Positions 19,008 through 62,818 of a stretch of 64,000 nt of DNA are shown here, piece by piece. Location: the IMG/VR virus record IMGVR_UViG_3300042934_000547, positions 167,976-231,975 of that record; one strand, given 5' to 3'. The translations under genes and the position numbers were made by a program. Under the pieces are notes generated by a model that was not told the DNA's origin, did no database searches, and was given only the letters and a program-made list of their open reading frames with translations. How positions within the stretch are numbered: the first letter of the stretch is position 1; each line of letters starts with the position of its first letter.

Positions 19008-20150
19008 TTATATTAATTTAGGCATTGATAAAGTAGCCGTTACCTGAGGTTCAGCTTCTTCTTTGAATGCTTCTTTACCCTGAGTTAATACTTTAACACA
19101 GATTGCTTTTGCTTGTCTGTTTTCTGCTTTAAGAGCTGATAACATAGTAGCGTTAGCTGTTTGAGAAAGAGTTAACAGTTTCTTACCATAAGAGCAAGCT
19201 ATATGAGCAACTTTAACTTTTAATTGGTAAGTTTGACCGAAACGTTCTTCAGAACCAGCAGCAGAAGTATTTCTGTCTTTTTCAGCTGAAGCCAATGATG
19301 TTTGAAGTTTATCACACATTTTAGTGAATTCATCGCACATTTTCTTAATTGCCTTCATGTTGTTTTCAGCAGTTTTCTTCTGATCTTTGTAATTTGATAT
19401 GATAGATAATTGAGCTGCAACAGAAATATCGGAATCTTCAAGAGTCACTTTATTCTTTTCGCCGTCTCTTAATACTTCATACAAATTGTCTCTGAATTCT
19501 TTAGTAGTCATAGATGCTTCTGCTGAACCAGCAACGACTGTTTTGTATATTTTAGCTGTGAATTTCTCCATAGCTCCTTCACTGTCGTCACTATAACCAG
19601 CAACTGATTTCTTAGCTTTTTCAAGGTTAGCAGCGTCAACCTGAACTCCACTATCTGATAATGTAACACCAAGATCTGTTGATATTCCATCTTTAATAGC
19701 TGTCATAGCACTCAAATTCAAGTCAGCTTTGCTGATTGTGTATTTGAATCCTTTAAATTTAAAGCTGTCTTTAATAGTAGTCTTAGCTAATTCACCTGAA
19801 TACTTCTTAACAAATTCTTTGTCAGAAAGCATGAATGAATCCATCATAGAGATGAATTTCTTGAATAAAGCTACAGCCTTTCTATAAAGAGCAACTATCC
19901 AGTCTTTTACCTGATTGAAGAAATCACCAACGAATCCTTCAGTAAGTAAGTAATCCTGTCCATTAGCAGCTTCTTGGAGCTGTCTTTGTTCTATATATGT
20001 TTCAATAGCATTCCAATTAGCTTCATTTTCATAAAGAGCCTGCTCATTTATTTCCATGACACTCTCGCCAATTGCCGCTTCTATTGTATCGAATTCCGGT
20101 AAGATGCTCGCATCTTCTGATAGTACTTTTTTGCTATCTAAATTTATCAT
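19008..20150 (-). CDS. Abundant internal head protein family member
   Basis: Acidic propeptide, LTEGFVGDFFNQVKDWIVALYRK..FKKF..DKEFVKKY. Confidence 0.6.
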   Translation of the reverse strand: MINLDSKKVLSEDASILPEFDTIEAAIGESVMEINEQALYENEANWNAIETYIEQRQLQEAANGQDYLLTEGFVGDFFNQVKDWIVALYRKAVALFKKFISMMDSFMLSDKEFVKKYSGELAKTTIKDSFKFKGFKYTISKADLNLSAMTAIKDGISTDLGVTLSDSGVQVDAANLEKAKKSVAGYSDDSEGAMEKFTAKIYKTVVAGSAEASMTTKEFRDNLYEVLRDGEKNKVTLEDSDISVAAQLSIISNYKDQKKTAENNMKAIKKMCDEFTKMCDKLQTSLASAEKDRNTSAAGSEERFGQTYQLKVKVAHIACSYGKKLLTLSQTANATMLSALKAENRQAKAICVKVLTQGKEAFKEEAEPQVTATLSMPKLI

Positions 20151-38300: not shown

Positions 38301-41300
38301 TAACAAGTTCAGCCGGAATCATACCATCATCAGCTCTATTACCCTTAGCATCTTTAGTACCGAATAATTTATTTTGTAAAGTTTCACTATTTTTAATGAT
38401 ATTAACACTAGCACCCACAGCAGCACCAAGTAACGGTCCACCAATGACACCCGGAATCAATCCAATAGCTCCACCGATTAAAGCTCCTGAAACTCCTTCA
38501 GGTAAATGATCTAAAACTTCATCATAAACCTTTCTAGAATTAAGCTTAAGGTTTTTCTTAAACTCTTCTTCCTTACCTTGTTCAATACCAGTAAAAGCTG
38601 ATACAGCTGTAGATATTTCATCAGCCATTTCTCTTTTTATAGCTCCGAATAAACCTCTTTCGCCATAATTTTCTTTATCCCATTCATGGGCTTTATCGAG
38701 ACCTTTACCGAATTTATTACTAGCTTTATTTTTAAGATCATCAAGGTTATCAAAATCCATAGTCTTATAAAATGCATCAAATACCTTGGTCTTGATATTA
38801 TATAAATTCTTATTATCACTTTCGTAAGCATAAGGTTCTTGAATAACACCCATTTGCTCCCTAAGTGTTTTTCTAATAATATTATTATCAAAACTAAAGT
38901 TTTTAAGATTAGGATCTTTTGCAGTAGGAATTGCCTTTTTAGCTTTTCTTCTAGCTGTATCGATATCTTTGATAGCTTTATTAAACTGCTCTCTAGTGAG
39001 TTGTCCTCGTTTATACATCTCACCAAAAGCCATAGATAGAGTATCATACATACGATTTGTGCCTTCGATGTATCTTAAACGCTTAAGTGATAGAACTACT
39101 TCCGTTCCGTCTTCACCAAGTGTTGCCACTGTTGGTTCACTAACAACGCCTTGAGCAGCAAAAGCAGGAATCTTCTCTGCACCCAATAATTGATTAGTTA
39201 TCCTGTCCTGTGCATCCTTACTATGATTATTGATGTACGGTACATTTTTTGTAATCCTCTTAGCTTGTTCTTTATCAAGCAGATTCATTGGTAAAAAGTC
39301 ATAATCATCATCTGTTAACTTACCAAAAACTCCACCACTAAAAGCATTTGCTTGTATAGGACCCTGTTTATTCTTAATTTTACCATCATGAATTAATTTT
39401 CTGATAGCTGGAATATTACGAGGATCTTGATAATTATCTTGTGTTATTATACTATCAAGGTTTGGAGCTGATATACCTCGTTTTTGTAAAATTGTTCTCC
39501 ACTTATCCCTAGTGTATTGAAGTGGATTAATTGAACCTAAATTGCTTTTAGCAATTCCAAGGGCATTTAACTTTTCAGCTTCTCTATCATCTGCATCATC
39601 GAATAACTTCATTAATGACTGATAATCGCCATAATTTGTTCTTTCCCTTAGATTACCACTTCTATCCTTAGCCCAAGTATTAAAGTTTGTTGCATTAGAT
39701 AGAACTTTTTGTGTATTTAAACCACCCTCTGATGATAAATCTAATCTATCAGGAGATGTTGGTGTAAACTTAGATACGAATTTTGCCATAGCTGGGTGAT
39801 GAGATAATCTCGTATCAATTATCTGTAATAAATTCACCATATCGGATACTTTAGCCATCATGCCTTTCATGAATATAGCTGGATTAGCCTGCATATTTCC
39901 GAATACAGATTGGTTATTTTCATTATCTTTAAACTTAGAACGAATATCGTTTTGTTCTTGTACGTAGTGAAGTTGTTGTAATAACGCCGAGCTGGATTGT
40001 TTATCAAGTTCATCGAACGAGGTCATAGCACCAGATGTACCAAACAGATCATTGTACATTTTTTCTTTTTCTTTTCTTATACTAAATGTACCACTTGTAC
40101 GTCTATATGAACCTATTTGTTTACGACGTTGCTCTATAGCTAATAATCTATCTTTAAGTCTAGTAATTTCTATGTCGATAGCTTTATTACGGTTCTTATA
40201 ATAATCAACTCGTTTCTTATATCCAGATGATGCTTGAGCAGTTTTTCTTTTATCACCTGATTGTTTAGATTTATTAACTTCACTTAACCAAGCACTTAGT
40301 GATTTATTATTGGACTCTTTTTCAGACTCCAACTTTTTAATCCTTTGGGAGATTTCTCTTGATTCCTTAGTCAATGTATCAAGTTCTTTGAGATAATCAT
40401 CATAATTCTGGCTATTATCAACAAATTTACTCTTTAATTCTTGAGTTCTACTAGGAGTTAATCCAAATCCAGCTGTTTCTAATCCCTGATTTACAATATC
40501 AGAATAATCAATTTCTTTCTCTTTCTTATCTCCAACGAACCAGCTAAACATTCCTCGTGTATCTTCACCGATTTGTTTAGTAAAGTCACCCATAACCCCG
40601 CCGTGTCTCCATCCTTTAGCATCTTTCTCGCCAAATAGATGTGTCATAAACTCGTCGGCTTTATCTTTAGCTTTACCTTTCCATTCGTCAACCTTTTCAA
40701 AAACACCCCAATCTTCTAATCTTTCACGGAGAGGAGTTAGAAAATAATCATTAATTTTATCATTAAGTTTTTCGAATGTGTTACGAATACTAACAACCAT
40801 CATATCCATATATCCACGGACTTTTTCGCCTTGATAGTTAACTTCTTCACCACCATAGAAGAATTCATAAATTCTTTTATCAACCTTACTAAGCATTTTA
40901 GTGATGGTTTCGGTAGGTTTACTAAGAACTTCGGACATTTTATCTGATGTGTATGTAAATTTATCAACAATGCCATCGGCAGCAATAAGACCATCTAAGA
41001 AACCAATCTTTTTACCAGCTTCATCATTAGATAAATCATATTGACCATCTTCTTTTTTCTTCATCCATGGATAAATTTTTCGGTCTTTCTCCCTAGCATT
41101 TTCTAGAGCTTTTTGTTCGATTTCAGCAACCTTTCTTTTACGTTCTAATTTACTTTCTGTATTATCACTAAAGGTTCCATCTTCATTTTCATCATCAAGT
41201 AAGCCAGAAAATAATGGTCTACCGTGTTCATCGTCCCATTCTCTATCTTCTTGAAGTTTTCGTTTAGCATTGATATTTAGATTTTGATAATAAGTAGCTT

Positions 41301-43509
41301 TATAGAAGTTCTCTGAATTATCAGATACAACTCCACCATAATCAACTAAATCCATATCTTGCCAATTTTTACTATTTCTTTCTTTAGCACGTTTCTTAGC
41401 TCTCTCATATTGATCAATTCTACGCTTATTTTCCTTATCAACAGAGCTACGTTGTTTACTGATATCCTTTCTACGCTGGTCGTCAAATGATAACACTTTC
41501 CTAGTTTCGGATAACATAGATCTTCTATCCAAACCACCAATGTTAAGAACTGAACCACCACCACGGATTGGAGACATTCCCATATCACCCATAGGCATAC
41601 CAAATGCTGGATAAGTAACTATACCTTCTAACATAACATTTCTTATATCTCTTAGATAATCGAAAATCGTTTTGTTATAAGCATCTTTAGTTTCACCTAA
41701 ACTCATTTTATTCATAACGCCAGTGATAACGTCATCCCCAAAGCCATCTTTTTGAATTTTTAAATGCTCATTTAATTTAGTATTATTAAGCAAAGCATCA
41801 TAGATATCTTCCTGTCTAGCTTTGTCTTTAGCGTATTGACCCTTATTACTGAACATTTCTTGATTAGCTTTCATCAATTTATGTGGATCAACATATTTAA
41901 TCATTGATGTGATAAGATCATAATTATCATCGCTTATTTCAAGATCTGGTAATCTGTTTTTCTTAAACTTTCTAGGACTGATAAGTTCACCTCTATCAAA
42001 GAAATAAGAGAAATAATTCTTCATATCTTCTCTAAATGATTGCTGTTCATCGAAATTCATAACAATCAATTGGTCAACTCTATCTTTAATTTCTGACTGT
42101 ATATCACTAAAGGTCCTATTAATAACATTTTCCTTCATACTAGATAATTCTTTGGATAAATTAACAGTGTTAATCCACTGACCTCTATCAAAATCAAATC
42201 TCATCTCAGCTGAACCAGTCATTGCTGATAACTGTTTAGCTAGTAATGTAGGTATAACTTCAGTTAATGCTTTTTGTGCTTTACCATTCCAAGCCATATC
42301 ACCTTTATGATAATCTGCAACACTCTTTTCTTTAGCTTTATTTATTCTTGGTACTAATAATCCAGCCAATGTTTTTACAAGAGGATTATTTTCCTCGTCA
42401 TTAGCAATGGAATTTAGCATAGCCATAGATGTAGCAAATGAACCACCCACTGAAGTATCAAGTTTCCCCATTGCCTTTCTTAAATCTTTCCCAATCATTT
42501 TATTAGCAACTGCCCTAGGAATAAATTTAAGCGGTGAAGAAACCATGTGTAAATATGGGTTAGCATTTGGATCATCATTATCGCTGAACATTGTAGCCAA
42601 TTGAGTAACATCTTCAAGTTTGGCATTTATGTTGTCACCAATTGATTTTACATATTTCTTTAAATCAGTAACTCCGGATGCCTGTATTACATCATCATAG
42701 TATGTTCTACGGTCTTCTTTATCTTTCTTTTGTTCAGGTTGTCTAGCTTTATACATATCACGCTGCATTTCAACAACTTCTTTCATGTAACCCAGCATAT
42801 CAGTTTGAAATGCAACGGTTTTTTCATAAAAAGATTTGCTATTCTGGGCATGAGTTTGCATTATATCAATGCTGTTTTTAGCAACGAAATCTAATTGTTT
42901 ATTTATATTTCCGAGAGCACCCTGAAGCATGAAATTGGCTTTTTGATTTCTGATTATTTGGTCTCTGTATTGAACTTTTGAATTCTCGACAGCATATTCT
43001 GATGTAGCTACTAATGTCTTAGCAATAGAATTGGCATTAGTGATACTACTATGAATAATACTATCAGATACCATATGATCACCTTGAGTCGGTCGTCTAT
43101 CTACCTTTGGTTCATCGATATCATCATCAAAATTACCATCAAGATCAAATTCTTTATCAAAATCAAAGTCATCATCACTATTATACCCTCCGTCATTTTC
43201 CATGCCGAATGATCTATTAGCGAACAATTCATCACGCTGTCTATTATAAAACTTACCAGATTTGATATCTTCAAATATAGCTTTTTTACCCTCTGCGGCA
43301 GTTTTATAAATATTATGTGATTTCATACGTTCATTAACACGATTGAATAATTGACGATGATCTTTAATATCATAAATAATATCCCTAAAAACTTCGCTAT
43401 TTTTAGCGACAGCATCGAACATCGCTGGTGCGTCATCTCTTATTATATCAGATGTCGAAAAAGCAACAGACGAAGCAATGTTTTTAGTATATTCAAGGAT
43501 TTTTTTCAT
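32314..43509 (-). CDS. Tape measure protein (~3730 aa) with C39-like peptidase and GH73 glucosaminidase domains
   Basis: Coiled-coil and Gly-zipper stretches; PAFAAQGVVSEPTVATLGEDGTEVV TMP motif; YWSQNDPQW..ACGPTAMSM..GHY..VNDP; LESGWGTS..KNNFSGY..YYASDPKW; start MKKILEY after AAGGAG. Confidence 0.85.
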   Translation of the reverse strand: MKKILEYTKNIASSVAFSTSDIIRDDAPAMFDAVAKNSEVFRDIIYDIKDHRQLFNRVNERMKSHNIYKTAAEGKKAIFEDIKSGKFYNRQRDELFANRSFGMENDGGYNSDDDFDFDKEFDLDGNFDDDIDEPKVDRRPTQGDHMVSDSIIHSSITNANSIAKTLVATSEYAVENSKVQYRDQIIRNQKANFMLQGALGNINKQLDFVAKNSIDIMQTHAQNSKSFYEKTVAFQTDMLGYMKEVVEMQRDMYKARQPEQKKDKEDRRTYYDDVIQASGVTDLKKYVKSIGDNINAKLEDVTQLATMFSDNDDPNANPYLHMVSSPLKFIPRAVANKMIGKDLRKAMGKLDTSVGGSFATSMAMLNSIANDEENNPLVKTLAGLLVPRINKAKEKSVADYHKGDMAWNGKAQKALTEVIPTLLAKQLSAMTGSAEMRFDFDRGQWINTVNLSKELSSMKENVINRTFSDIQSEIKDRVDQLIVMNFDEQQSFREDMKNYFSYFFDRGELISPRKFKKNRLPDLEISDDNYDLITSMIKYVDPHKLMKANQEMFSNKGQYAKDKARQEDIYDALLNNTKLNEHLKIQKDGFGDDVITGVMNKMSLGETKDAYNKTIFDYLRDIRNVMLEGIVTYPAFGMPMGDMGMSPIRGGGSVLNIGGLDRRSMLSETRKVLSFDDQRRKDISKQRSSVDKENKRRIDQYERAKKRAKERNSKNWQDMDLVDYGGVVSDNSENFYKATYYQNLNINAKRKLQEDREWDDEHGRPLFSGLLDDENEDGTFSDNTESKLERKRKVAEIEQKALENAREKDRKIYPWMKKKEDGQYDLSNDEAGKKIGFLDGLIAADGIVDKFTYTSDKMSEVLSKPTETITKMLSKVDKRIYEFFYGGEEVNYQGEKVRGYMDMMVVSIRNTFEKLNDKINDYFLTPLRERLEDWGVFEKVDEWKGKAKDKADEFMTHLFGEKDAKGWRHGGVMGDFTKQIGEDTRGMFSWFVGDKKEKEIDYSDIVNQGLETAGFGLTPSRTQELKSKFVDNSQNYDDYLKELDTLTKESREISQRIKKLESEKESNNKSLSAWLSEVNKSKQSGDKRKTAQASSGYKKRVDYYKNRNKAIDIEITRLKDRLLAIEQRRKQIGSYRRTSGTFSIRKEKEKMYNDLFGTSGAMTSFDELDKQSSSALLQQLHYVQEQNDIRSKFKDNENNQSVFGNMQANPAIFMKGMMAKVSDMVNLLQIIDTRLSHHPAMAKFVSKFTPTSPDRLDLSSEGGLNTQKVLSNATNFNTWAKDRSGNLRERTNYGDYQSLMKLFDDADDREAEKLNALGIAKSNLGSINPLQYTRDKWRTILQKRGISAPNLDSIITQDNYQDPRNIPAIRKLIHDGKIKNKQGPIQANAFSGGVFGKLTDDDYDFLPMNLLDKEQAKRITKNVPYINNHSKDAQDRITNQLLGAEKIPAFAAQGVVSEPTVATLGEDGTEVVLSLKRLRYIEGTNRMYDTLSMAFGEMYKRGQLTREQFNKAIKDIDTARRKAKKAIPTAKDPNLKNFSFDNNIIRKTLREQMGVIQEPYAYESDNKNLYNIKTKVFDAFYKTMDFDNLDDLKNKASNKFGKGLDKAHEWDKENYGERGLFGAIKREMADEISTAVSAFTGIEQGKEEEFKKNLKLNSRKVYDEVLDHLPEGVSGALIGGAIGLIPGVIGGPLLGAAVGASVNIIKNSETLQNKLFGTKDAKGNRADDGMIPAELVRTFNKYAPDTLKLGVGGALMSILPFVPGGPITGLLAGSAIAFAKNNEGAQKFLFGDGIDDNGLFSKKSQETFKKALPKTLGGAAIGAIGSFIGPFGLVGGTLLGGTLGALSTNDTVREMIFGKWDPVTKKRENGLIPIVGEAITSPFKKMISGMKDGFKEFFDKKIKNPFLYALQPFGKELKLVGKKLGNYVKGLFDETIGGPIKRFMTKFLFKPLGALIKGVVSTPINLFGAVTNGVLGALGLSSKSLRAKHIRQGDADYMTAEERETFRVRNNKYFRPGLTSKGGILKTLFGVIGGGAINPALGLGLGVMGSTQGVLHGRDKFHRYDKNMMEFTEKMSEDEYYELQSEIEQAKAEAAQGIDPRYSANKYPWLRKLLGPNFMQSDAQRSIAGKAQRTRQGIRDQFKVNVEDKRTRITKEMETEREKLKQNSLTKFWQNRDKRGFDEIEARYHAMKNEYERGLVDLKSPMDRAEWFNTFDQVEKLYLKTKNKMDKAIEKGEANFIKRYRKQFNVLDTEEEKFRESELRYTKGIKNSFGNSQALKGMEYLLSESNTFAKQRGFKTYAEYKKEMDAKKLPKDGATLVAEEGNEIAKEQTSIQNQILESLEAQRDFMVHGKDGAKFKALEEKTAKSNVVNLQSKNGVPDTGTTIGQETLDLQTKRHQEILNGGSYYDPNKMTEEELTKYSKGSYDAESKTITIFTDEGIPIKYDKDSSGEWRPIQDKNFKQWGKLKSMITGISESAFGKATTNIKDKVTHGLGFVGNLLKGVGPFLGKMLLGTLGVKAAKTIWSKWLGNTGFGKNMEWIWNNPAEAAGKAGDKFGEIWTSHIKPFLTEKLPTFLDKIKEGILGIGQKIIENMPIILQNMWDIMVANKEHLLDFLKIYTGWKVAKWGVGAATGYGTSLISTGAGAAGGFLVGKAKDGVKGAWKGIKGLFGKKVAEEATETVAEGALKKTGEKIIIEGVEEATGKGAEQVTKKAADKVLNESMQEATKGAAKVGAKEVLEEGAEVTAKNISKKGIRTAVEGSRGKLVTWFVGLLDPVIESILKVVKKFMPNFGQKGLSAFIKNTFSSCHKYFSNTKIAAKIAEKSGRDVAGIATGGIVNLVFMVGFGAWGASKTGAAKWFGVPKEDVDAKMQAISGVMQFLLQAPAVWILEIVNLVTTSFLGYNFLQKLAVWLYDAWNGELDITEDSRTMAQLQNKYLDKVPSVPKSQTKRELADSYIIEDGDSTVVGMGGKSNSSKQYLTGGGFGNSKFKFINPRTSSNSKQYLTGGGFGNNKGKPANRTSNSRRISTTPKGTPISQNTDYWKKYTEYQQSLAPDYYQKTNAHNEELRKALEQQTGVDAIYNRWRGYEEYLDGKATTVGENVSFNNQLRLLNGFPYWSQNDPQWKDLYYAQNYTYGDAACGPTAMSMITSAFNNKPISPLDLTDMGLRYWIDNAGTAHDMFSSSSNPQLSDYNVKGQNISNTWDSLKANIEAGRPVVINGQGNISTTPYTPGGHYSVVTGMASDNSVWVNDPMGEGESTEFSKDALFKNGTTKSMWAYTDINGKNLRLTDRAGFANVPTIAEGGNKESGLFDWMGKMASGIGLFGDAIMGVVGTKYGFETHENILSKIANWTRENGGTQMPTGLAASFANAIGGYTNINSTAVNTSNLAQMPAGMGFVRRRGGGFGSLSGADLQNKFFTGAYANKPLKKHANDLANAANKFGVNPLFLSSLVALESGWGTSALAKNKNNFSGYAAYDSSPYKSARTFDSPAQNFDETARLLKNNYLTPGGKYYIDGSLGGVNKYYASDPKWSGTISDIMASRVKNFDPNAQIGGFGNAKKSGRFGGFGKTSPVIKSAFELADESRKLDAMDNPNSFEFMDADMSSVAELSMRDRENIMKSNFGGQNINTTINAGTIDANLIELLTRIVMSVSNIGRTNELLQDILNLITKKLNINITENDIKELTKKSSSGNSINPNALLNIINEKGGKGGTGDNSLTALIAAMLPLTQ
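34470..34581. repeat. Perfect 37-bp direct repeat, 75-bp period
   Basis: tattaccgaatcctccaccagttaaatattgtttcga at 34470-34506 and 34545-34581 (encodes SKQYLTGGGFGN twice). Confidence 0.95.
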
Positions 43510-43612
43510 AACTCGATTTCTCCTTTCTATATTACTGTATTGCCTTATGAGTATGTTGAAAAGAAACAAAAAGTGGGAGTACAACTTAATGTACTCCCAA
43601 TTGATCTAATTA

Positions 43613-54246: not shown

Positions 54247-56007
54247 ATGCAATATGGTACTAGACAAAGAGTGAATAATGATATAGCTGGTATGAGCTAT
54301 AAAAAAGATAAGCTTTATAAATATGCTGAGCAAACTAATGAGTTGAGAACAGCAATTAAGGAAGAAACTGGGTTAGATATATTTACTACTCCGGGAGGTA
54401 TATCAAATGATAGATATGCCGTTGCGAGAAACCAGTTAAAGGATTTCTTCGTACAAGAATCATACGATCCTGATTTGGTAACTACATTGGACGAACAATC
54501 AGCAGTTATGGATGACATGGGTGCTTTGTTCGAAAACATGATGGATGCTATGGAAACAACTGTAGGTTCTCCTATTCAGACTAACCTTAACGAGTCTGTT
54601 GCGTTGAACACTTTGAATCCAATCATCGCTATGTCTCCAATGATATACAAAGATATATTGATTAACAATATATTCCAAAGTGCTATCGATACTGCTGTTG
54701 CTGTAAGTCCTATCGTACCAATAAGACATGAGCACAGATATTTAGTTTCGGTTGACGGAACTAAGAAGATTGATATTTCTAAGCAGCAACACATGATAAA
54801 ATCATTTATGGATGAAACTGCTCCATTTAAAGAAATAGTAATCACTCTTCCAGAAAACGGTTCAGTTGACATAATTGCTGCATTAAACGGCAATAATTCT
54901 GATTCATTATCAACAGCTTCTTATATTTCTAAGATTGTTATTGATAAAACTGCTGCACCTGTTGAACCTGCAACTGAAATTGAAACAGTAGAAAGACTCT
55001 GTGATTTCAGATTATTACCACAAGGTTTCAATACTACATCTGCTCAAAGATATTTGATCCAAGATGTATTGTTACCTTACTTAGATGCTCAAGGTAATCC
55101 AGTGGCAGACACAATGACTGTTACTATGAACAATAACAAATTAACAGCTATGTCTTCAATGGGTAAAATAAGATCTATAACTTTCAAAGCAAGACTTGAT
55201 ACTTCAACAGCAATGTTAAAGACTTGTACAACTGCTTGGGAGCATGAAAATACACAAATCGGAATCGATGATGGTATGCCTCTTGCTACTACTGTTAACC
55301 CAAGTGAATTGAAAGATATTGCAGCTTTATTCAATATTGATCAGTTGACTAAAGTTATGAGTATATTCAGAGACACAATGGCTAACTACAAAGACAGCCA
55401 CATTTATGAATACCTAGTTGATTCTTATAATAGAATGCCTGATGATTTCGGTGGAAAATTCTCTGGTAAATTCGACTTTGCTGATATAGCAGGATATCAT
55501 GTACAGAATCCAGAATCTTGGAGACATGAAGCATTTATGCCTATATTGGACTCTTATATTTCAGATGCTTTACAACATTTAAGAGACCCTAATATATCAG
55601 TAACAATATTAGGTAGACCTGACCTTATCAGAAAGATCGAGCCTTCTAAATACGAATATCAGTCTCCAAAGAATATCGGTGCTATTCCTCTTGAATTCAA
55701 CAGAACTGTTACTACTAACCACGGCAGACAGTACAACTTCAACAGCTCAATGAAGATTAACTATGATACAGCAAACAGAAACAAATTCAGAGTTGTATTT
55801 AATCCTACATCATCTGAACGTTTCATCTACAGACTGTACAACTACCAGTTAGTAATTTCTAATGAAATCAAAGCTCAGGAGAACTTAGCATTGCCATCAG
55901 TATATGCATTCGAAAGATTCAAAGTTACTGAATGGCAACCAGTTCAAGGTGAAATTCTTGCAGTTAATCCTTCAGGATTCACTAAACCTGAATACGCTAA
56001 CCTGTAA
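54247..56007 (+). CDS. Probable major capsid protein precursor
   Basis: 586 aa; perfect RBS; late-type promoter 54202-54213; high-expression codon bias (ttc/aac/tac); propeptide ending ~NLNES; own terminator. Confidence 0.65.
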   Translation: MQYGTRQRVNNDIAGMSYKKDKLYKYAEQTNELRTAIKEETGLDIFTTPGGISNDRYAVARNQLKDFFVQESYDPDLVTTLDEQSAVMDDMGALFENMMDAMETTVGSPIQTNLNESVALNTLNPIIAMSPMIYKDILINNIFQSAIDTAVAVSPIVPIRHEHRYLVSVDGTKKIDISKQQHMIKSFMDETAPFKEIVITLPENGSVDIIAALNGNNSDSLSTASYISKIVIDKTAAPVEPATEIETVERLCDFRLLPQGFNTTSAQRYLIQDVLLPYLDAQGNPVADTMTVTMNNNKLTAMSSMGKIRSITFKARLDTSTAMLKTCTTAWEHENTQIGIDDGMPLATTVNPSELKDIAALFNIDQLTKVMSIFRDTMANYKDSHIYEYLVDSYNRMPDDFGGKFSGKFDFADIAGYHVQNPESWRHEAFMPILDSYISDALQHLRDPNISVTILGRPDLIRKIEPSKYEYQSPKNIGAIPLEFNRTVTTNHGRQYNFNSSMKINYDTANRNKFRVVFNPTSSERFIYRLYNYQLVISNEIKAQENLALPSVYAFERFKVTEWQPVQGEILAVNPSGFTKPEYANL

Positions 56008-57269: not shown

Positions 57270-57350
57270 TTTCTAGTATAGGGGTTTACCCCTATACTAT
57301 TTTATTTTGTCTAAAACACTTCATTAGTGATTAATTGGAGGTATTAGAAT

Positions 57351-57962
57351 ATGCAAGAATTTAAACCGTTATTTATCGTTTTTGATGGAATTGATGGATG
57401 TGGTAAGACCACACAATTAAAATTGTTTAGCAATTTTTTATCAGAATTAGGAGCTGACAATACTATTGTGCGATTTCCGGGTGGAACAGGATTTGGAAAT
57501 ACTATCCGTGATATGTTATTGAGGAAAGTATTTAATCAAGCTGGTGAAGCATTAGCATTTGCACTCGATAGACATCATACTCTCAATAAAATTGTCAGAC
57601 CTGCATTATTAGAGAATAAATTTGTATTAGCAGATAGGTATGACAGTTCATCTTTAGCATATCAAGGGGTTGATATAACTAATGACCTAAATAAAGCTGG
57701 GGAGATATCAGAAGCTGATTTATACATAATATTTAGAATGGACCCAAAACTCGCATTAGATAGAGCACAACAACGAGAAGCATTGAATGAACTTGAGAAG
57801 GATGTATTCACCAATCGTGTTGAAAAGATTTCTAAGGTTTATAATAATCTACCAAGAAAAAATGTCATTTATATTGACGTAGATGAATTTAAAACTGCTG
57901 AAGATATTCAGTTTGAAGTAGCTATTAAATTTACCGATTTTTACTCTAAAATAAATAAATAA
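57351..57962 (+). CDS. tmk: Thymidylate kinase
   Basis: FIVFDGIDGCGKTT P-loop, RFPGGT, LADRYDSSSLAYQG. Confidence 0.95.
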   Translation: MQEFKPLFIVFDGIDGCGKTTQLKLFSNFLSELGADNTIVRFPGGTGFGNTIRDMLLRKVFNQAGEALAFALDRHHTLNKIVRPALLENKFVLADRYDSSSLAYQGVDITNDLNKAGEISEADLYIIFRMDPKLALDRAQQREALNELEKDVFTNRVEKISKVYNNLPRKNVIYIDVDEFKTAEDIQFEVAIKFTDFYSKINK

Positions 57963-58028
57963 TTCTCCTGTAACTATTATATAGTGAGTAAATAGAATAA
58001 AAAGGTAGAAAATAAATGGGAGGAATAG

Positions 58029-58400
58029 GTGAAGTATATGAAGTTTGAATTTAACGTCAAAAATATAGGACAGATATCTGATGGTTCTCATACGTTTGAC
58101 GAATTGTATTACCACCGAATGATGTTATTTGCTGTAATTTGTAATACTTATAAAGATGCTGCGTGGAAATCATGGAAACATGAGGATGGAACGATGTATG
58201 ATGACTATTTCATAGTAGGAATAACTACCCCTGATGGAGATTATTCGTATCATTATCATAAAGACCACTGGGACATGTTTAATGTACGAGAATTAGCTAA
58301 AGCTCCAAAATATGATGGTCATCAGCCTAAGGATGTAGATAGGTTATTAAGTCTAGTACCCGGAAGTGCAATGAAAATAAAGAAACCTAAGATGAAATAA
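58029..58400 (+). CDS. WDGH-type small phage protein
   Basis: SDGSHTFDELYYHR...WKSWKHEDG...SYHY....W..F...APKYDGH pattern. Confidence 0.6.
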   Translation: MKYMKFEFNVKNIGQISDGSHTFDELYYHRMMLFAVICNTYKDAAWKSWKHEDGTMYDDYFIVGITTPDGDYSYHYHKDHWDMFNVRELAKAPKYDGHQPKDVDRLLSLVPGSAMKIKKPKMK

Positions 58401-58411
58401 AGGAGAAACAA

Positions 58412-58777
58412 ATGAAATCTGTAAAACATGATTTATTAACAAGTAAATATACAGTTGTACAGCACGAAAATGATGAAGATATGAAATTCGGAGTTCCGTG
58501 TAATTTTACTGTAGTTCAGTCTATTCTTGTTGAACCAAAAACTTTAGCTGAAATACATTTTCAAGAAGGTCCAATAAAAGAATGCGGAATAAATGGGGTA
58601 AATAACGAAGATTTAATAGCAATGGTTATTTGTAGACTCGGACATTTTCAAAATTCTAATTTTTCTTGTCGTGAGAATGCAATGGCTATCACTAAACTTG
58701 AAGAAGCTTTATTATGGCTTAGAAAGAGAACCATGGGAAGGGAACAAAGGGGTGTTGAAGGAACACATGAATTATAA
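58412..58777 (+). CDS. tad1: Tad1-family anti-defence nucleotide sponge
   Basis: IHFQEGP..GVNNEDL..RLGHFQ..FSCRENAMAITKLEEALLWL..R...R..RGVEGT matches the Tad1 pattern as I recall it. Confidence 0.8.
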   Translation: MKSVKHDLLTSKYTVVQHENDEDMKFGVPCNFTVVQSILVEPKTLAEIHFQEGPIKECGINGVNNEDLIAMVICRLGHFQNSNFSCRENAMAITKLEEALLWLRKRTMGREQRGVEGTHEL

Positions 58778-58797
58778 TATATAAATAGGAGAAATAA

Positions 58798-58965
58798 ATG
58801 GCTTCAGGACATGTTTGGAATTACGTGATGATGCGATTACCAAATCAAGAGGTTGTTGAAGGACATATAAGTGGTTACAGACTTTTGAATAACATTATTG
58901 ATGTCAAAGTTAATGGTATTTGGTATAGCACACATATGAGTAATGTGGTTTTGATGGTTAAATAA
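58798..58965 (+). CDS. 55-aa hypothetical protein (not in ORF track)
   Basis: AGGAG RBS; MASGHVWNYVMMRLPNQEVVEG...YSTHMSNVVLMVK. Confidence 0.6.
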   Translation: MASGHVWNYVMMRLPNQEVVEGHISGYRLLNNIIDVKVNGIWYSTHMSNVVLMVK

Positions 58966-58967
58966 TA

Positions 58968-59402
58968 ATGAGAGAGGAATTTAAAATGAGAAAATTTAAT
59001 GCATGGGTTTTACTGGATTGTATATTCGTCCTATGTCTGTTATCAGCTGTTGTAACTGGGTGTACCCAAAGACAATCAGATAAGGTATCTTATAATCTAT
59101 CTCTTGAAGCAGATAATTTTAACGTAATACGACAATTGACATTTATCAATATCCGTACAGATGATATATTATTCCAAATGACTGGAAATTTATCTATTAA
59201 AACCGATAATGGTGATGGTCAATTAGAAATTGTTGTCAAAGATGGTGAAACGTATCGTAAACATTTCATTCGATTAAATGAATGGGTTACATATGTTGTA
59301 GAGGATGTTACCGTGTATGGAACAGATGTTAATAATTATAAATACACTCTAAACTATAATCCGAAGATGTGGGTTCCATTGGAATTAAAAACAATTGAAT
59401 AA
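58968..59402 (+). CDS. Putative lipoprotein
   Basis: Signal peptide with lipobox VTGC; SYNLSLEADNFNVIRQLTFIN domain typical of Firmicute phages. Confidence 0.7.
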   Translation: MREEFKMRKFNAWVLLDCIFVLCLLSAVVTGCTQRQSDKVSYNLSLEADNFNVIRQLTFINIRTDDILFQMTGNLSIKTDNGDGQLEIVVKDGETYRKHFIRLNEWVTYVVEDVTVYGTDVNNYKYTLNYNPKMWVPLELKTIE

Positions 59403-59434
59403 ACTAAAAAATATAAAATAAAAGGAGAAAACAA

Positions 59435-60154
59435 ATGGCTTTAGGACAAAATACAAACAATAATAAGGATAAGGATATTGTAAATATCTGGTCAAGAATT
59501 TCGTTTATCAATCAGGAAGACACATATGATCCATCTAGATTGAGTTATTCATTCTGGGGTGGTAATATGAAATTGACTATTGCACCGAAAAAAGATGGCG
59601 ATGCTATGGGTTATGATAATGATACTGCACTTAGCATATTCATATCACCAAGAATGGCTAAAAATTTAGCAGAGGAAATTCAATTATTCATAAAAGACCC
59701 AATGAAGTATAACAATGTCGGTATTGCAACTAAGAAAGGTATAATCCTTGTTTCTAACGGAATGGTTGAAACTGGTAAATTTACACCAATGGTAAAAATC
59801 TCAACACTGAATGATAAATTGATACCAGAGGTTACTTTTGCACATGCATTCCAAAGCACATTCAGTATCAGAAATTATGATGCTAAAACAGGTGATTTTG
59901 AAAAAATAGATAAAGATTTATTATCACTCGGTATGTTGTATGATGCATTAACTGAATTTACTAATGCTTCTTCTGCGGCATATGCATATGTGAACTTAGA
60001 TAAGTTTATCAATGGTGGCTATGCTAATAAACTTGGTAAAGATTCATCTTCTTCATACGGTAGTGATAAGAATGTGTATTCACAGTTTGACAACAAACAA
60101 CCGTCAGGTAATTCAACCACCTATACTTCTGGTGATTTAGAGAACTTATTATAG
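59435..60154 (+). CDS. Hypothetical protein, possible ssDNA-binding protein
   Basis: Two beta-strand plus helix units and a disordered S/D-rich tail. Confidence 0.4.
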   Translation: MALGQNTNNNKDKDIVNIWSRISFINQEDTYDPSRLSYSFWGGNMKLTIAPKKDGDAMGYDNDTALSIFISPRMAKNLAEEIQLFIKDPMKYNNVGIATKKGIILVSNGMVETGKFTPMVKISTLNDKLIPEVTFAHAFQSTFSIRNYDAKTGDFEKIDKDLLSLGMLYDALTEFTNASSAAYAYVNLDKFINGGYANKLGKDSSSSYGSDKNVYSQFDNKQPSGNSTTYTSGDLENLL

Positions 60155-60204
60155 GATGTAGCAATACATCCTTTTTGTTTTTCTTATAGAGAGGAAGTGA
60201 AATA

Positions 60205-60864
60205 ATGATTACTGATAAAAACAATCCTTCTAATATGCATAATCGAGTTGAGAGATTATTAATCCCATTTGATTTAATTTGTGACATAGATTTAGGATGT
60301 ATCAGGTATTTAAAGACTGACGCATTTGTACATGCTTCAATTCAGAAAGATAAAGATGAAGATTTATATTACACTGAAGATAATATAAATCCAATTAAAT
60401 TTATGATACCTGAATTTGACATAAAAGATGCAGTAGCTATGTTTAGCGAAATGTGTAACACTCGTAATGATTTAATTGCCATGATGACTTTTGGCGGTCC
60501 AATGCAATTATCTAAATTACTGCAAAGATATATATCAATGGACGATGTTAAGGTACAAGTTGATATTTTAGTTGATAATGTTATTGAAGAAGAATATATT
60601 GAAAAGAATTATAACTCACCAAAAATTCAATCTGTATATTTTGGAGAGATGGTTGTTTCTGATTATGATAATATCTTCATAAAATATCATGAGGAATTAA
60701 CGACATTCTACGATGTTGATGATTTACGGGGAAAGAATATCACATTTCTAGGTTCAGCACATAATCTTACTATAGATGAATTAATTCATACTATATTTGA
60801 AAACAATTTGATTACATCAAGAATGATGGCATATGAAAAAATGGAGGCTCCAATAAATGAATGA
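60205..60864 (+). CDS. Hypothetical protein
   Basis: 219 aa in operon with the chaperonin. Confidence 0.55.
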   Translation: MITDKNNPSNMHNRVERLLIPFDLICDIDLGCIRYLKTDAFVHASIQKDKDEDLYYTEDNINPIKFMIPEFDIKDAVAMFSEMCNTRNDLIAMMTFGGPMQLSKLLQRYISMDDVKVQVDILVDNVIEEEYIEKNYNSPKIQSVYFGEMVVSDYDNIFIKYHEELTTFYDVDDLRGKNITFLGSAHNLTIDELIHTIFENNLITSRMMAYEKMEAPINE

Positions 60865-62818
60865 ATTTCAAACACAGATGTCTAATATAGTTGGAAGTGG
60901 TGCTTTAAGAAAAATTCAACACCACACACTTAAACAATGCAGCGATGCAATTGAAAAAAGCTATGGTCCTAAAGGCTCAAATAGTACAATAATAACTGAG
61001 GTTGGTAAAACATCAAATGGATTACCAATGGCTGTTACAAAATACACAAAAGATGGTCATACAATCCTTGAACACCTTAACTTTATAGGGGTTATGGAGA
61101 GATGTATAAAAGAGTCATTGTATGATATGACTCATTCAATAGCTCACAGTGTTGGAGACGGTACATCAACGACTGTTATAATGGCTTACATAGTATTTGA
61201 AGCTCTTACAAAATACATGGATGAACATCCGGAAATTAACCCTTCAGATTTATCTGAGCACTTCGATGATGCTGTTCAGGAGATATGTGAAGAAATTCTT
61301 AAACATAAGAAAGAATTCACATTAGAAGATGTAAGAGATATTTGCACAATCTCTTCCAACAACAATAAGAAAATTGTTGAGGAGATTTATAATATATATG
61401 AGAAGTATGGACTTGATACGAAAATATCATTAAATACTTCTCCTTCTCAAGAATCTTTTGTTAAAGGTAACAGAGGTATCACATTGCGATCTTCTTATGC
61501 AGATTCATCGTTTGTTAATACTCATGATGGTAAATGTGAAATTCAGAATCCGAGAATCTACGTATTCAAAGATCCTATCTATAATGATAGACTTGCTGAT
61601 ATATTCAGTGCAATTATTGAAACAAACGTAATACAATGGGTTGAAAAAGCTCAGGCTGAACGTAATCAGAAGTATTTTGCAAATATCATCCCTACTGTAA
61701 TATTAACACCAGAAATCAGTGTTGATTTAAGTGGATATATGCAGAAGATTTGTACATTACAAGGTTCATTACCATTGGATGGTAAATTCCCTATATCTAT
61801 TGTTTCTAACATTAGTAGAGATGACATTCTTGATGATGTATGTAAACTTACTGGAGCTAAAGGTATAAAAAGATATATATCTGAAGAAATGATGGAACTT
61901 GAATCAAAAGCTGGTGTTGCTGTTACTATGGAAAATCTTGGTGATGCTCATGGTACTGCAAGAATGGTTGTTTCAGATGCACTTAATACCGTTATTGTTG
62001 AACCAAGCAATCTATACGTTAACTATCACGCAGAAATAGATAAGCATATAGAAGAGTTAGGACGTATTAGTAAGTTTGGCGATTCTCTGGATATCAATAA
62101 TTCAGAAGAACTTAAGGAATTCATGATTACACAACTCGGTATAGATCCAGAAACTGTAAAGAGTGTGAGTGATGACGTTATGAATCTGATTGGCATATAT
62201 AAAGAGGTAAAAGCGATTGAAGCTAAGATTAAATCCGGCGAAAAAGAATTCTCTATGGAAGCTAAGGCACTGATTGCATTCTTAGAAAATAAGATGGAAG
62301 CTTATCGTAGAGAAAATCAAATTACTTCTTATCATAGGATTAAAGACAGACTCCATGGTATTCTTGGTAATTTAGTTGAATATTATGTTGGTGGTATGTC
62401 TATATCAGATAGGGAGCAGACTAAGTATACTGTAGAAGACTGTATCTTGTCATGTCGTTCAGCATTCGAAAACGGTGTAGGTAGAGCATCAAACGTTGAA
62501 GGGATGATGGCAGCATATAAATTGCAAGCTAAATCTGATATGCATAAGATTATACTTGAAGCATATAAGACATGTACGCTGAAACTTTATCAAACTGCGG
62601 TACCTGAAAAAACAGCTGAACTATGGTTAATTTCAGTTCTAGCAAGCGGATTTCCTGTTGATATAAGAACTGGTAAACCATCTGACAAGGTTAAGAGTAG
62701 CATTATGTCTGATGTAAGTATTCTAAATACTTTATCTAAGATATTGACTCTTATGGTTACCACAAATCAGCTTATAGTCCCTGATCCTATCATGAACCAA
62801 TATAAAAATATTCAATAG
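60857..62818 (+). CDS. Phage GroEL-like chaperonin
   Basis: SYGPKG, TKDGHTI, VGDGTSTT, YYVGG, VEDCILSCRSAFENGV. Confidence 0.92.
   Translation: MNEFQTQMSNIVGSGALRKIQHHTLKQCSDAIEKSYGPKGSNSTIITEVGKTSNGLPMAVTKYTKDGHTILEHLNFIGVMERCIKESLYDMTHSIAHSVGDGTSTTVIMAYIVFEALTKYMDEHPEINPSDLSEHFDDAVQEICEEILKHKKEFTLEDVRDICTISSNNNKKIVEEIYNIYEKYGLDTKISLNTSPSQESFVKGNRGITLRSSYADSSFVNTHDGKCEIQNPRIYVFKDPIYNDRLADIFSAIIETNVIQWVEKAQAERNQKYFANIIPTVILTPEISVDLSGYMQKICTLQGSLPLDGKFPISIVSNISRDDILDDVCKLTGAKGIKRYISEEMMELESKAGVAVTMENLGDAHGTARMVVSDALNTVIVEPSNLYVNYHAEIDKHIEELGRISKFGDSLDINNSEELKEFMITQLGIDPETVKSVSDDVMNLIGIYKEVKAIEAKIKSGEKEFSMEAKALIAFLENKMEAYRRENQITSYHRIKDRLHGILGNLVEYYVGGMSISDREQTKYTVEDCILSCRSAFENGVGRASNVEGMMAAYKLQAKSDMHKIILEAYKTCTLKLYQTAVPEKTAELWLISVLASGFPVDIRTGKPSDKVKSSIMSDVSILNTLSKILTLMVTTNQLIVPDPIMNQYKNIQ

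What the first reader, a model, noticed from the sequence alone, without database searches (positions are those of the whole stretch)
58029..58965. Tad1 sponge with an adjacent WDGH-type protein: probable anti-defence operon
Established: Tad1 proteins sequester Thoeris gcADPR signals, and some also bind CBASS cyclic oligonucleotides. Seen: 58412..58777 carries the Tad1 signature, and the co-transcribed upstream protein is small and rich in conserved-looking His/Trp/Tyr/Asp residues. Inference by association: the WDGH-type protein and the 55-aa ORF are candidate new signal sponges or nucleotide-cleaving anti-defence proteins.
Basis: partly seen in the sequence, partly recalled or inferred. Interest (0 to 1): 0.6.

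Follow-up and report, generated by a model that had tools for sequence, protein, structure and literature searches.

The report
Tad1 sponge beside uncharacterised WDGH protein
A soil jumbo phage carries a genuine Tad1 immune-signal sponge next to a small, highly conserved protein of unknown function (WDGH domain), and in other phages that WDGH domain is repeatedly fused or adjacent to four different anti-Thoeris proteins, which makes it a strong untested candidate for a new phage counter-defence family.

Summary
ORF2 (58412-58777) is a Tad1: E 2e-36 and 55-56% identity to solved CmTad1, model TM 0.85, and all published gcADPR, cyclic-trinucleotide and hexamer residues are kept or conservatively replaced. 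ORF1 (58029/58038-58400) is a stand-alone PF25311 WDGH domain (155 bits).

WDGH has no characterised function in the searchable literature and no PDB fold match. [quoted passage not shown]

The "operon by association" argument is only partly right. The specific WDGH-Tad1 adjacency is not conserved: 0 of 64 Tad1 loci carry WDGH, they lie about 14 kb apart in Bacillus phages, and a relative about 92% identical lacks exactly the Tad1 cassette.

WDGH itself, however, is recurrently fused to Tad2-like, Tad3 and Sequestin domains. It also sits inside sponge-gene arrays (Tad2-Acb2/Tad1-WDGH; WDGH-Tad2-Sequestin).

ORF3 (55 aa) has no protein homologue anywhere, although its DNA is conserved in the relative.

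Verdict: a known sponge beside a strong, untested candidate for a new counter-defence family. Whether WDGH binds signals, cleaves them or does something else is unresolved.

The parts
57274..57299 (+). Terminator-like hairpin followed by a T-run; the likely upstream boundary of the transcription unit
   Evidence: 11-bp stem, 5 GC pairs, T-rich tail
57351..57962 (+). Thymidylate kinase gene, first gene of the unit
   Evidence: PF02223 at 100 bits; phrog_761
58029..58400 (+). ORF1: stand-alone WDGH-domain protein (123 aa from GTG 58029; more likely 120 aa from ATG 58038). Function unknown; predicted homodimer; candidate counter-defence module
   Evidence: PF25311 at 154.7 bits; invariant residues; model pLDDT 88.8; no PDB fold match; dimer score 0.75 against best control 0.45; fusions and arrays with Tad2-like, Tad3 and Sequestin
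58412..58777 (+). ORF2: Tad1-family signal sponge (121 aa), CmTad1-like clade
   Evidence: 8kbb E 2.3e-36; Foldseek TM 0.85 and 55-56% identity to CmTad1, TM about 0.80 to CbTad1; binding and hexamer residues conserved
58366..58787 (.). 422-bp segment (tail of WDGH, then the Tad1 RBS and gene) that a related phage in run X2 replaces with 42 other bases: a Tad1 presence/absence cassette
   Evidence: joint 58365->58788 in a 925-nt contig at depth about 2395
58798..58965 (+). ORF3: 55-aa orphan ORF with a good RBS. Its DNA is conserved, with no listed indel inside it, in the X2 relative
   Evidence: no Pfam, PHROG, NCBIfam or PADLOC hit; no tblastn hit in phages; only a self hit among 5.8 billion proteins; RBS; relative's contig spans 58788-59240
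58968..59402 (+). ORF4: Phage_VG64 family protein with an N-terminal lipoprotein-like signal. The internal ATG at 58986 has the better RBS
   Evidence: PF25682 at 140 bits; phrog_478; sequence read
59435..60154 (+). ORF5: 239-aa protein with no family, last gene of the unit
60153..60172 (+). Terminator-like hairpin followed by a T-run; the likely downstream boundary of the unit

Best explanation
ORF2 is a functional Tad1-family sponge. By homology it should form a hexamer that sequesters TIR-made gcADPR (Thoeris) signals in six pockets at its dimer interfaces and cyclic trinucleotides (CBASS) in two pockets on its three-fold axis. That would stop the host effector from being switched on. It sits as a gain-or-loss cassette inside a six-gene, same-strand unit (tmk, WDGH, Tad1, ORF3, VG64-like lipoprotein, ORF5). 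ORF1 is an autonomous WDGH-domain protein. I infer that it is a separate counter-defence module: a small homodimer with a fold absent from the PDB, whose invariant His/Asp/Arg/Lys/aromatic residues form a site that binds or cleaves a small nucleotide-derived immune signal or NAD-derived metabolite. This would add a second activity against signalling immunity, in the same way that known sponge domains are combined in fusion proteins. Shown here: Tad1 identity, fold and residue conservation; WDGH domain identity, extreme conservation, predicted dimer, and its recurrent fusion and adjacency to verified anti-Thoeris families. Inferred: that WDGH acts in counter-defence at all, and its ligand and mode of action. 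ORF3 is probably a real small gene, but nothing can be said about its role.
For: Tad1: phmmer to 8kbb (CmTad1) E 2.3e-36 over residues 3-121, and to CbTad1 E 1e-11. The AF2 model has pLDDT 87.6 with an N-terminal beta-sheet and two C-terminal helices. Foldseek gives TM 0.85 and rmsd 2.2 A to 8kbb, and about 0.80 to 7uaw. Residues equivalent to CmTad1 C87, R88, A91, M92, T95, K96, W103 and K106 are identical, with Q98E and M102L as conservative changes. CbTad1 F82, N92, R109 and R113 correspond to F79, N89, R106 and R110 here. N89, R106 and R110 are invariant in 33 homologues. WDGH: PF25311 at 154.7 bits; 4,042 representatives of 50%-identity clusters at E<=1e-3. D18, H21, E25, R30, W46, K47, H51, D53, Y74, H75, W81, D96, H98 and R105 are conserved in at least 90% of 150 representatives. 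Fusions: Tad3 x3 in both domain orders, Tad2-like x3, Sequestin (PF21825) x2, Lar and P22 gp17 among 150 representatives. ESM Atlas clusters: Tad2-like+WDGH with 246 members, Tad3+WDGH with 117 members. Sequestin is a verified 3'cADPR sponge that was itself discovered by this fusion logic (PMC12265669). Tad3 is a verified ThsB inhibitor (PMC13728456). Arrays: L090 Tad2 / Acb2-Tad1 hairpin / WDGH; L080 WDGH / Tad2 / Sequestin; L094 WDGH-Tad2 fusion / Sequestin; L064 and L058 Sequestin / WDGH. Of 13 Tad2 or Sequestin hits in +/-6 kb windows, 12 lie within 900 bp on the same strand. Sponge families make up 6 of 128 immediate neighbours against 0 of 90 distal genes, Fisher p = 0.039. Predicted homodimer: ipSAE 0.75 against a best control of 0.45, runs agree in at least 61% of contacts, partner pLDDT at least 79; the mark was reached by 20 of 30 solved homo-pairs and 1 of 23 single chains. 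Transcription unit.
Against: No experiment or publication links WDGH to any activity. The specific WDGH-Tad1 adjacency is not conserved and Tad1 is dispensable in a close relative. Most WDGH extensions (about 130 unrelated clusters) and most neighbours have no known function, so anti-defence partners are a minority of all partners. The neighbour enrichment is modest (p = 0.039) and some of the positive loci are related to each other. Neighbours also include nucleotide-metabolism genes (tmk here; dUTPase and a dGTP diphosphohydrolase elsewhere). Such high conservation (55-85% identity across hosts) is unusual for known sponges. I could not inspect model coordinates, so the existence of a pocket is inferred and not seen. 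The dimer is a prediction made with my own alignment.
Confidence: 0.6

Rival explanations
1. WDGH is counter-defence, but it works by binding and blocking a defence protein (as Tad3 to Tad8 do) rather than by binding or cleaving a small signal.
For: Tad3-6 are small phage proteins that bind ThsB directly. WDGH is fused to Tad3 in both orders. The conserved surface outside the dimer interface could be a protein-binding face. WDGH is also fused to non-signalling anti-defence domains (Lar, gp17).
Against: Protein-binding inhibitors usually evolve fast along with their targets. WDGH keeps 55-85% identity and an invariant His/Asp/Arg set across phages of Bacillus, Listeria, Streptococcus and, at about 40%, Salmonella and Klebsiella. 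That fits an invariant small ligand or catalysis better.
Confidence: 0.15
2. WDGH is a generic dimerisation or scaffold module that raises the valency or stability of whatever small domain it is attached to, with no defence-related activity of its own.
For: 81% of representatives carry extra segments, drawn from about 130 unrelated clusters. The predicted symmetric helix-helix dimer and fusion in either order also fit a scaffold.
Against: 29 of 150 representatives, this copy and Listeria phage A511 gp21 are stand-alone, so WDGH has an autonomous role. A scaffold would not need invariant His, Asp, Lys and Trp residues that lie outside the interface. The solved, active Tad3 has no WDGH domain.
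Confidence: 0.1
3. WDGH has a function unrelated to defence (nucleotide metabolism, a metal-dependent housekeeping enzyme, or regulation). Its association with sponge genes only reflects that small accessory genes are packed and shuffled together in the same variable regions.
For: It lies directly downstream of thymidylate kinase here. Neighbours elsewhere include dUTPase, a dATP/dGTP diphosphohydrolase, PTH2, YopX and methyltransferases. It is retained in a relative that lacks Tad1. It lies far from Tad1 in Bacillus phages.
Against: Among fusion partners that can be named, verified anti-Thoeris families dominate (8 of 18 partner assignments, plus Lar and gp17), and large fusion clusters exist. 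Sponge genes cluster within under 1 kb of WDGH rather than being spread across the +/-6 kb windows, and are absent from the distal controls. In P22-like phages WDGH is a moron inserted after the coat-gene terminator, which is typical of accessory rather than core functions.
Confidence: 0.15

Closest known systems
Tad1 (Thoeris anti-defence 1), specifically CmTad1 from Clostridioides mangenotii (PDB 8KBB-8KBD) and CbTad1 (7UAV, 8KBE-H)
   Same: ORF2 has the same length, 55-56% identity, the same fold (TM 0.85), and the same gcADPR-pocket, cyclic-trinucleotide-site and hexamer-interface residues.
   Different: Two conservative interface changes (Q98E, M102L). The loop between the beta-strands (residues about 37-46) is shorter and variable. 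The Pfam hairpin model scores below its threshold. The ligand spectrum is untested; CmTad1 binds cyclic dinucleotides only weakly.
Sequestin (PF21825, crAss001_48) and Tad2 (PF11195): small homo-oligomeric signal sponges found as fusions
   Same: Like them, WDGH is a small phage-specific domain that occurs both alone and fused to other sponge domains, sits in the same gene arrays, and is predicted to be a homo-oligomer.
   Different: No sequence or fold relationship. WDGH is alpha+beta, about 100 aa, far more conserved, and rich in invariant His and Asp. No ligand is known.
Signal-cleaving phage enzymes (Acb1, Apyc1, Acb5)
   Same: They are small, and Acb5 is also a homo-oligomer using conserved His, Arg and Trp at its pocket. 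An invariant His/Asp set is compatible with catalysis.
   Different: No Pfam or fold match to any of them. Acb5 is a tetramer concentrated in actinophages, whereas WDGH is concentrated in phages of Firmicutes and enterobacteria.
Tad3 (PF25185; PDB 9B7D), a ThsB-binding inhibitor
   Same: It occurs in one polypeptide with WDGH in at least three representative clusters and one 117-member Atlas cluster.
   Different: It is a separate domain. The crystallised, active Tad3 has no WDGH.

Membership tests
Tad1 | Significant full-length sequence similarity to experimentally characterised Tad1 proteins | tested here: met
   8kbb E 2.3e-36 over residues 3-121; CbTad1 chains E about 1e-11
Tad1 | Fold: N-terminal antiparallel beta-sheet followed by two long C-terminal helices | tested here: met
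   Model pLDDT 87.6 with strands 14-18, 31-36 and 44-50 and helices 65-80 and 87-113; TM 0.85 to CmTad1 and about 0.80 to CbTad1
Tad1 | gcADPR / cyclic-dinucleotide pocket residues (CbTad1 F82, N92, R109, R113) | tested here: met
   F79, N89, R106 and R110 are present; N89, R106 and R110 are invariant in 33 homologues
Tad1 | Cyclic-trinucleotide site and hexamer interface (CmTad1 C87, R88, A91, M92, T95, K96, Q98, E99, M102, W103, K106) | tested here: met
   Nine residues identical, Q98E and M102L conservative
Tad1 | Pfam PF24729 Acb2/Tad1 hairpin at or above the gathering score | tested here: not met
   22.9 bits against 27, matching only profile positions 22-52. The model covers only the shared hairpin and misses this clade; the PDB matches outweigh it
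Tad1 | Hexamer formation, ligand binding, and rescue from Thoeris or CBASS | not testable with these tools
   Needs SEC/SLS, ITC or native gel assays, and plaque assays
WDGH domain (PF25311) | HMM match above the gathering score over the whole domain | tested here: met
   154.7 bits against 27, profile positions 1-97 of 97; confirmed in the genome search
WDGH domain (PF25311) | Conserved motif set (DG.HTF.ELY.HR, WKS..H, YFIVG, Y.YH, W/Y-DGH, RL) | tested here: met
   All invariant columns are present; the name-giving W is Y here (YDGH), as in several homologues
Phage nucleotide-signal sponges (traits defined in PMC12265669) | Short protein (under about 200 aa), phage-specific | tested here: met
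   120-123 aa; Atlas clusters are 82-95% viral; 0 of 14 control genomes hit
Phage nucleotide-signal sponges (traits defined in PMC12265669) | Homo-oligomer | tested here: inconclusive
   Prediction only: dimer score 0.75 against best control 0.45; the mark was reached by 20 of 30 solved homo-pairs and 1 of 23 single chains
Phage nucleotide-signal sponges (traits defined in PMC12265669) | Deep, positively charged pockets at protomer interfaces | not tested
Only indirect evidence: invariant H29 and R30 lie in the interface helix, while K47, R105 and four His lie outside it
Phage nucleotide-signal sponges (traits defined in PMC12265669) | Occurs fused to known sponge families | tested here: met
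   Tad2-like and Sequestin fusions
Phage nucleotide-signal sponges (traits defined in PMC12265669) | Binds and releases an intact immune signal; inhibits a signalling defence system | not testable with these tools
   Needs biochemistry and infection assays
Sequestin / Tad2 / Tad3 / Lockin / Acb5 (is WDGH itself one of these?) | Sequence or fold match of the WDGH domain to the family | tested here: not met
   No Pfam hit other than PF25311. No PDB sequence hit or fold hit, although Tad2, Tad3 and, a Lockin crystal structure have been solved. Distribution and architecture differ from Lockin and Acb5
Operon (co-transcribed unit) | Same strand, short gaps, own RBSs, no internal terminator, flanking terminators | tested here: met
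   No promoter could be assigned: promoter-like sites are not above chance (24 found against 19.3 expected). Transcription itself was not shown

The most novel reading that the evidence does not exclude
WDGH (PF25311) is a new, very widespread family of phage counter-defence proteins (more than 4,000 clusters at 50% identity) with a fold not represented in the PDB. It would be a homodimeric, His-rich module that neutralises a nucleotide-derived immune signal or NAD-derived metabolite by sequestration or hydrolysis. Phages would deploy it alone, or welded to Tad2, Tad3, Sequestin and other anti-defence domains, to disarm Thoeris-type or other signalling immunity.
Probability: 0.4. Interest if true: 0.8.

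Novelty: new variant of a known kind. Interest (0 to 1): 0.62.

Why it matters
Tad1 on its own is routine: one more member of a well-studied sponge family. What matters is WDGH. It is one of the most conserved and widespread small phage domains with no assigned function. It is present in well-known phages (Listeria A511 and P100, B. cereus-group Bastillevirinae, P22-like Salmonella phages, streptococcal and lactococcal prophages). It shows the same 'fused to known sponges' signature that recently led to the experimental discovery of Sequestin. If WDGH is an anti-defence module, it would add a major family and a new fold to the phage counter-immunity repertoire. It could reveal a new ligand or a new enzymatic way of disarming TIR or CBASS-type signalling. 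It would also be relevant to the host range of therapeutic and food-safety phages that carry it. The clean Tad1 presence/absence polymorphism between two closely related phages also offers a natural isogenic pair for testing Thoeris sensitivity.

Tried and rejected
(1) Fold assignment for WDGH. Foldseek against the PDB found nothing at E<=1e-3. An exhaustive VIA-align search gave a best Z of 4.1, which is background level. BFVD and ESM Atlas returned only other WDGH proteins. The language-model Atlas search excluding PF25311 gave no usable hit.

(2) Motif ideas considered and dropped, by inspecting the sequence against family motifs recalled from memory. WDGH has no H-x-T/S-x pairs, so it is not a 2H phosphoesterase. 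HYHKDH is not a histidine triad, and no HIT-type name appears among the top PDB rows. The weak Zn-dependent phospholipase C hit (16.8 bits against a 26.8 cutoff) is below threshold.

(3) NCBIfam and PADLOC gave nothing for ORF1-3, ORF5 or the next gene, so these are not known defence components.

(4) Literature: no paper in the library mentions WDGH as a domain or PF25311. The library is not exhaustive.

(5) Conserved WDGH-Tad1 pairing is rejected.

(6) ORF3 has no relatives by any method. No function is proposed.

(7) Looking for relatives of the phage through ORF5 and the 586-aa ORF found nothing. Only raw-run contigs revealed a relative.

(8) Other sponge families in this phage genome: no Tad2-like or Sequestin (for Sequestin the control genomes were also silent, so that absence is weakly supported).

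(9) A second Acb2/Tad1 hairpin hit at window 19266-19391 (minus strand; 15.6 bits, E 0.004) is treated as chance.

(10) No alternative genetic code was needed.
Full report
**Setting.** The window is the last 64 kb of a 231,975-bp virus record with direct terminal repeats, so this is a jumbo phage. The only sequencing run that holds the whole stretch is a soil metagenome, which is probably its source. A 586-aa ORF just upstream has no tblastn match in about 50,000 phage genomes, so the lineage is poorly sampled.

The region 57.3-60.2 kb holds six same-strand genes: thymidylate kinase (57351-57962), ORF1 (58029-58400), ORF2 (58412-58777), ORF3 (58798-58965), ORF4 (58968-59402) and ORF5 (59435-60154). 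Terminator-like hairpins lie at 57274-57299 and 60153-60172, with none between them. The gaps from ORF1 to ORF4 are 11, 20 and 2 nt, and ORF2, ORF3 and ORF5 have AGGAG-type ribosome-binding sites. Co-transcription is therefore plausible but not shown. Promoter-like matches are at chance level (24 found against 19.3 expected).

**ORF2 is a Tad1.**
- phmmer against all PDB chains gives 'Thoeris anti-defense 1' 8kbb at E 2.3e-36 over residues 3-121, and the CbTad1 entries at about 1e-11. 8KBB is apo-CmTad1 (bioRxiv 10.1101/2023.11.15.567273).
- An AlphaFold2 model built on 33 homologues has pLDDT 87.6, with three beta-strands followed by two long helices. It superposes on CmTad1 at TM 0.85, rmsd 2.2 A and 55-56% identity, and on CbTad1 at about 0.80.
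- The paper defines the cyclic-trinucleotide site and hexamer interface (CmTad1 C87, R88, A91, M92, T95, K96, Q98, E99, M102, W103, K106) and the gcADPR/cyclic-dinucleotide pocket (CbTad1 F82, N92, R109, R113).
- In ORF2 these map to C86, R87, A90, M91, T94, K95, E97, E98, L101, W102, K105 and to F79, N89, R106, R110. All are identical except two conservative changes. N89, R106 and R110 are invariant across the 33 homologues.
- The only negative result is that Pfam's short Acb2/Tad1 hairpin model scores 22.9 bits against a cutoff of 27.

I regard membership as established at the sequence and fold level. Ligand binding and anti-Thoeris activity remain untested.

**ORF1 is a stand-alone WDGH domain.**
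- PF25311 matches end to end at 154.7 bits. The probable start is the ATG at 58038, which is where the homologues begin and where the gene is called in the collection.
- The family is very large: 4,042 representatives of 50%-identity clusters at E<=1e-3, 540 or more loci in IMG/VR, and 200 INPHARED records (Listeria 54, Bacillus 45, Salmonella 35, Streptococcus 13, Lactococcus 13, and others).
- Conservation is unusually high for a small phage protein, at 55-85% identity among the top hits. D18, G19, H21, E25, R30, W46, K47, S48, H51, D53, Y74, H75, W81, D96, G97, H98 and R105 are invariant or nearly so. This copy has YDGH in place of WDGH.
- The model is confident (pLDDT 88.8; a helix, a three-stranded sheet, and two short helices). 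It has no counterpart in the PDB: Foldseek finds nothing at E<=1e-3, and the exhaustive VIA-align search gives a best Z of 4.1.
- No PDB chain matches by sequence. No paper in the searchable library mentions the domain.

**What WDGH keeps company with.** Only 29 of 150 representatives are stand-alone. The rest carry N- and/or C-terminal segments that fall into about 130 unrelated clusters.

The partners Pfam can name are Tad3 (3), Tad2-like (3), DUF551 (3), PF21825 (2), YodL, P22 gp17, Lar restriction alleviation, DUF7336 and DUF7575. Tad3 occurs both C-terminal (P0130, P0155) and N-terminal (P0131) to WDGH, which implies independent fusion events. The ESM Atlas holds a 246-member cluster in which every protein has Tad2-like plus WDGH, and a 117-member cluster with Tad3 plus WDGH.

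- PF21825 is Sequestin, an experimentally verified 3'cADPR sponge against type I Thoeris. It was discovered precisely because it is fused to Tad2 and Acb4 (PMC12265669).
- Tad3 is a verified ThsB-binding inhibitor (PMC13728456). The crystallised Tad3 (9b7d) has no WDGH domain.

**Gene-order evidence.** In 80 IMG/VR WDGH loci, iterative searches seeded with the fused domains found Tad2-like genes in 6 loci and Sequestin-like genes in 7. Of these 13 hits, 12 lie within 900 bp of WDGH on the same strand, although the windows extend +/-6 kb.

Pfam verification shows the following arrays:

| Locus | Gene order |
|---|---|
| L090 | Tad2-like (878-1153), Acb2/Tad1 hairpin (1138-1458, 79.5 bits), WDGH (1492-1953) |
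| L080 | WDGH, Tad2-like, Sequestin domain |
| L094 | WDGH-Tad2 fusion, Sequestin domain |
| L064 | Sequestin, WDGH |
| L058 | Sequestin, WDGH |

Among 128 immediate neighbours from 66 non-redundant loci, 6 belong to sponge families, and NADAR and a D12 methyltransferase are also present. None appears among 90 genes at least 4 kb away in the same loci. Fisher's one-sided p is 0.039.

Some caveats apply. Several of the positive loci are related to each other. Only the top 25 families are listed per scan. Most neighbours are unannotated.

In siphophage contigs WDGH sits in the small-ORF region between the replication and packaging modules. In P22-like phages it is a moron after the coat-gene terminator. 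In Listeria phage A511 it is gp21, among small genes of unknown function near one genome end.

**The WDGH-Tad1 pairing itself is not conserved.**
- In Bacillus Bastillevirinae phages both genes exist but lie about 14 kb apart (Deep Blue, QCM8, BC-VP, Z3). In phage Shbh1 they are 1.2 kb apart with two genes between them.
- None of the 64 IMG/VR Tad1 loci has WDGH within 6 kb.
- Laying public runs on 57300-60200 showed that run X2 holds a relative (contigs 89-94% alike, depth about 2,300) with the same gene order. One contig in that run joins 58365 to 58788 with 42 other bases between them. The last 35 nt of WDGH, the Tad1 RBS and the whole Tad1 gene are replaced, and WDGH is followed directly by ORF3.
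- Tad1 is therefore a gain-or-loss cassette, and WDGH and ORF3 belong to the backbone.
- Short contigs identical to 58077-58369 or 58167-58427 occur in a freshwater DNA run and a wastewater metatranscriptome without the flanking genes. They are too short to interpret.

**Oligomeric state.** Two copies of WDGH residues 8-112 co-fold with ipSAE 0.75 (runs 0.72, 0.75, 0.76), against a best control of 0.45. The runs agree in at least 61% of contacts, and the partner's pLDDT is at least 79. The mark was reached by 20 of 30 solved homo-pairs and 1 of 23 single chains. These counts are only rough here, because my own alignment was used.

The interface is helix 23-40 packed against its symmetry mate (self-contacts at 26, 33, 37 and 40, so the helices run parallel about the two-fold axis) together with helix 100-110. 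E25, Y27, H29 and R30 lie in it. D18, H21, K47, H51, D53, H75, D96 and H98 are not listed in the interface, so a second conserved site probably exists. I could not inspect coordinates, so the pocket geometry is inference.

**Interpretation.** Tad1 here most likely works as published: a hexamer that sequesters gcADPR and cyclic trinucleotides.

For WDGH the best-supported reading is an autonomous counter-defence module. The grounds are its phage-restricted distribution, its location in accessory regions, its stand-alone and fused forms, and its repeated fusion and tight linkage to four verified anti-Thoeris families. Very strong conservation of His, Asp, Arg, Lys and aromatic residues, together with a predicted homo-oligomer, points to a small invariant ligand or to catalysis, rather than to a fast-evolving protein target.

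Sponge and enzyme cannot be distinguished here. I put about 0.6 on 'counter-defence' overall and about 0.4 on 'acts on a nucleotide-derived signal or metabolite'. The rivals are a protein-binding inhibitor, a scaffold or dimerisation module, and an unrelated housekeeping function; they are listed with their tests.

WDGH is not Lockin (a beta-rich hexamer absent from INPHARED) and not Acb5 (a tetramer found mainly in actinophages). It matches no PADLOC or NCBIfam model.

**ORF3.** This 55-aa ORF has a good RBS and its DNA is conserved in the X2 relative without a listed indel. It has no protein homologue in any library or in 5.8 billion proteins. Nothing supports the suggestion that it is a sponge.

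**Verdict.** The Tad1 is a new member of a known family. WDGH is an uncharacterised family with a fold not seen in the PDB and a clear, testable counter-defence signature.

Noticed in passing
window 32314-43584 (- strand): A single 3,756-aa ORF with Peptidase_C39_2 (residues 3141-3280) and glucosaminidase (3460-3567) domains near its C-terminus. It may be a giant virion-associated cell-wall-degrading protein.
   Followed up: partly
window 60857-62818 (+): A phage-encoded Cpn60/TCP-1 family chaperonin-like gene (52.9 bits), immediately downstream of the unit.
   Followed up: no
window 58968-59402 (+): ORF4 is a PF25682 Phage_VG64 protein. PHROGs annotates this family as a 'recombination directionality factor', yet this copy has a lipoprotein-like signal peptide (…LLSAVVTGC…), which does not fit an RDF. 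The ATG at 58986 has the better RBS.
   Followed up: partly
L013:3324-3884 (Salmonella phage g341c and other P22-like phages): A 186-aa WDGH protein is inserted as a moron between the coat gene's Rho-independent terminator and the gene 4 homologue (head-tail adaptor), so it lies in a late-gene context.
   Followed up: partly
L118:209-442 and 461-814: A Tad2-like gene lies directly upstream of a Tad1 gene in an IMG/VR contig: another two-sponge array, without WDGH.
   Followed up: no
window 58077-58427: Contigs 100% identical to most of the WDGH gene, one of them reaching 16 nt into Tad1, occur in a freshwater DNA run (X5) and a wastewater metatranscriptome (X4). No other part of the 2.9-kb stretch is detected there. 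This could be the same phage at low depth or a shared gene in another context.
   Followed up: partly
window 19266-19391 (- strand; G000:C1:187241-187366): A weak second hit to the Acb2/Tad1 hairpin model (15.6 bits, E 0.004) lies inside a 380-aa ORF. It is probably chance.
   Followed up: no
P0069, P0077, P0105 and 8 other proteins (N-terminal 44-72 aa shown): The commonest recognisable WDGH extension is an N-terminal CxxC…CxxC zinc-ribbon-like segment (11 proteins). Separately, one of the 150 representatives matches Pfam Lar restriction alleviation; whether that protein belongs to this cluster was not checked.
   Followed up: partly
L005:1130-1429; Bacillus phage vB_BanS_Nate (H54): A Tad4 (PF25186) gene lies about 3.6 kb upstream of WDGH in a siphophage contig, and a NADAR family gene overlaps or abuts the WDGH match in Bacillus phage Nate.
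   Followed up: no
window 54247-56007 (+): A 586-aa ORF has no Pfam family and no tblastn match in 50,697 phage records. ORF5 likewise has no relatives in IMG/VR. The phage lineage is poorly represented in databases.
   Followed up: no
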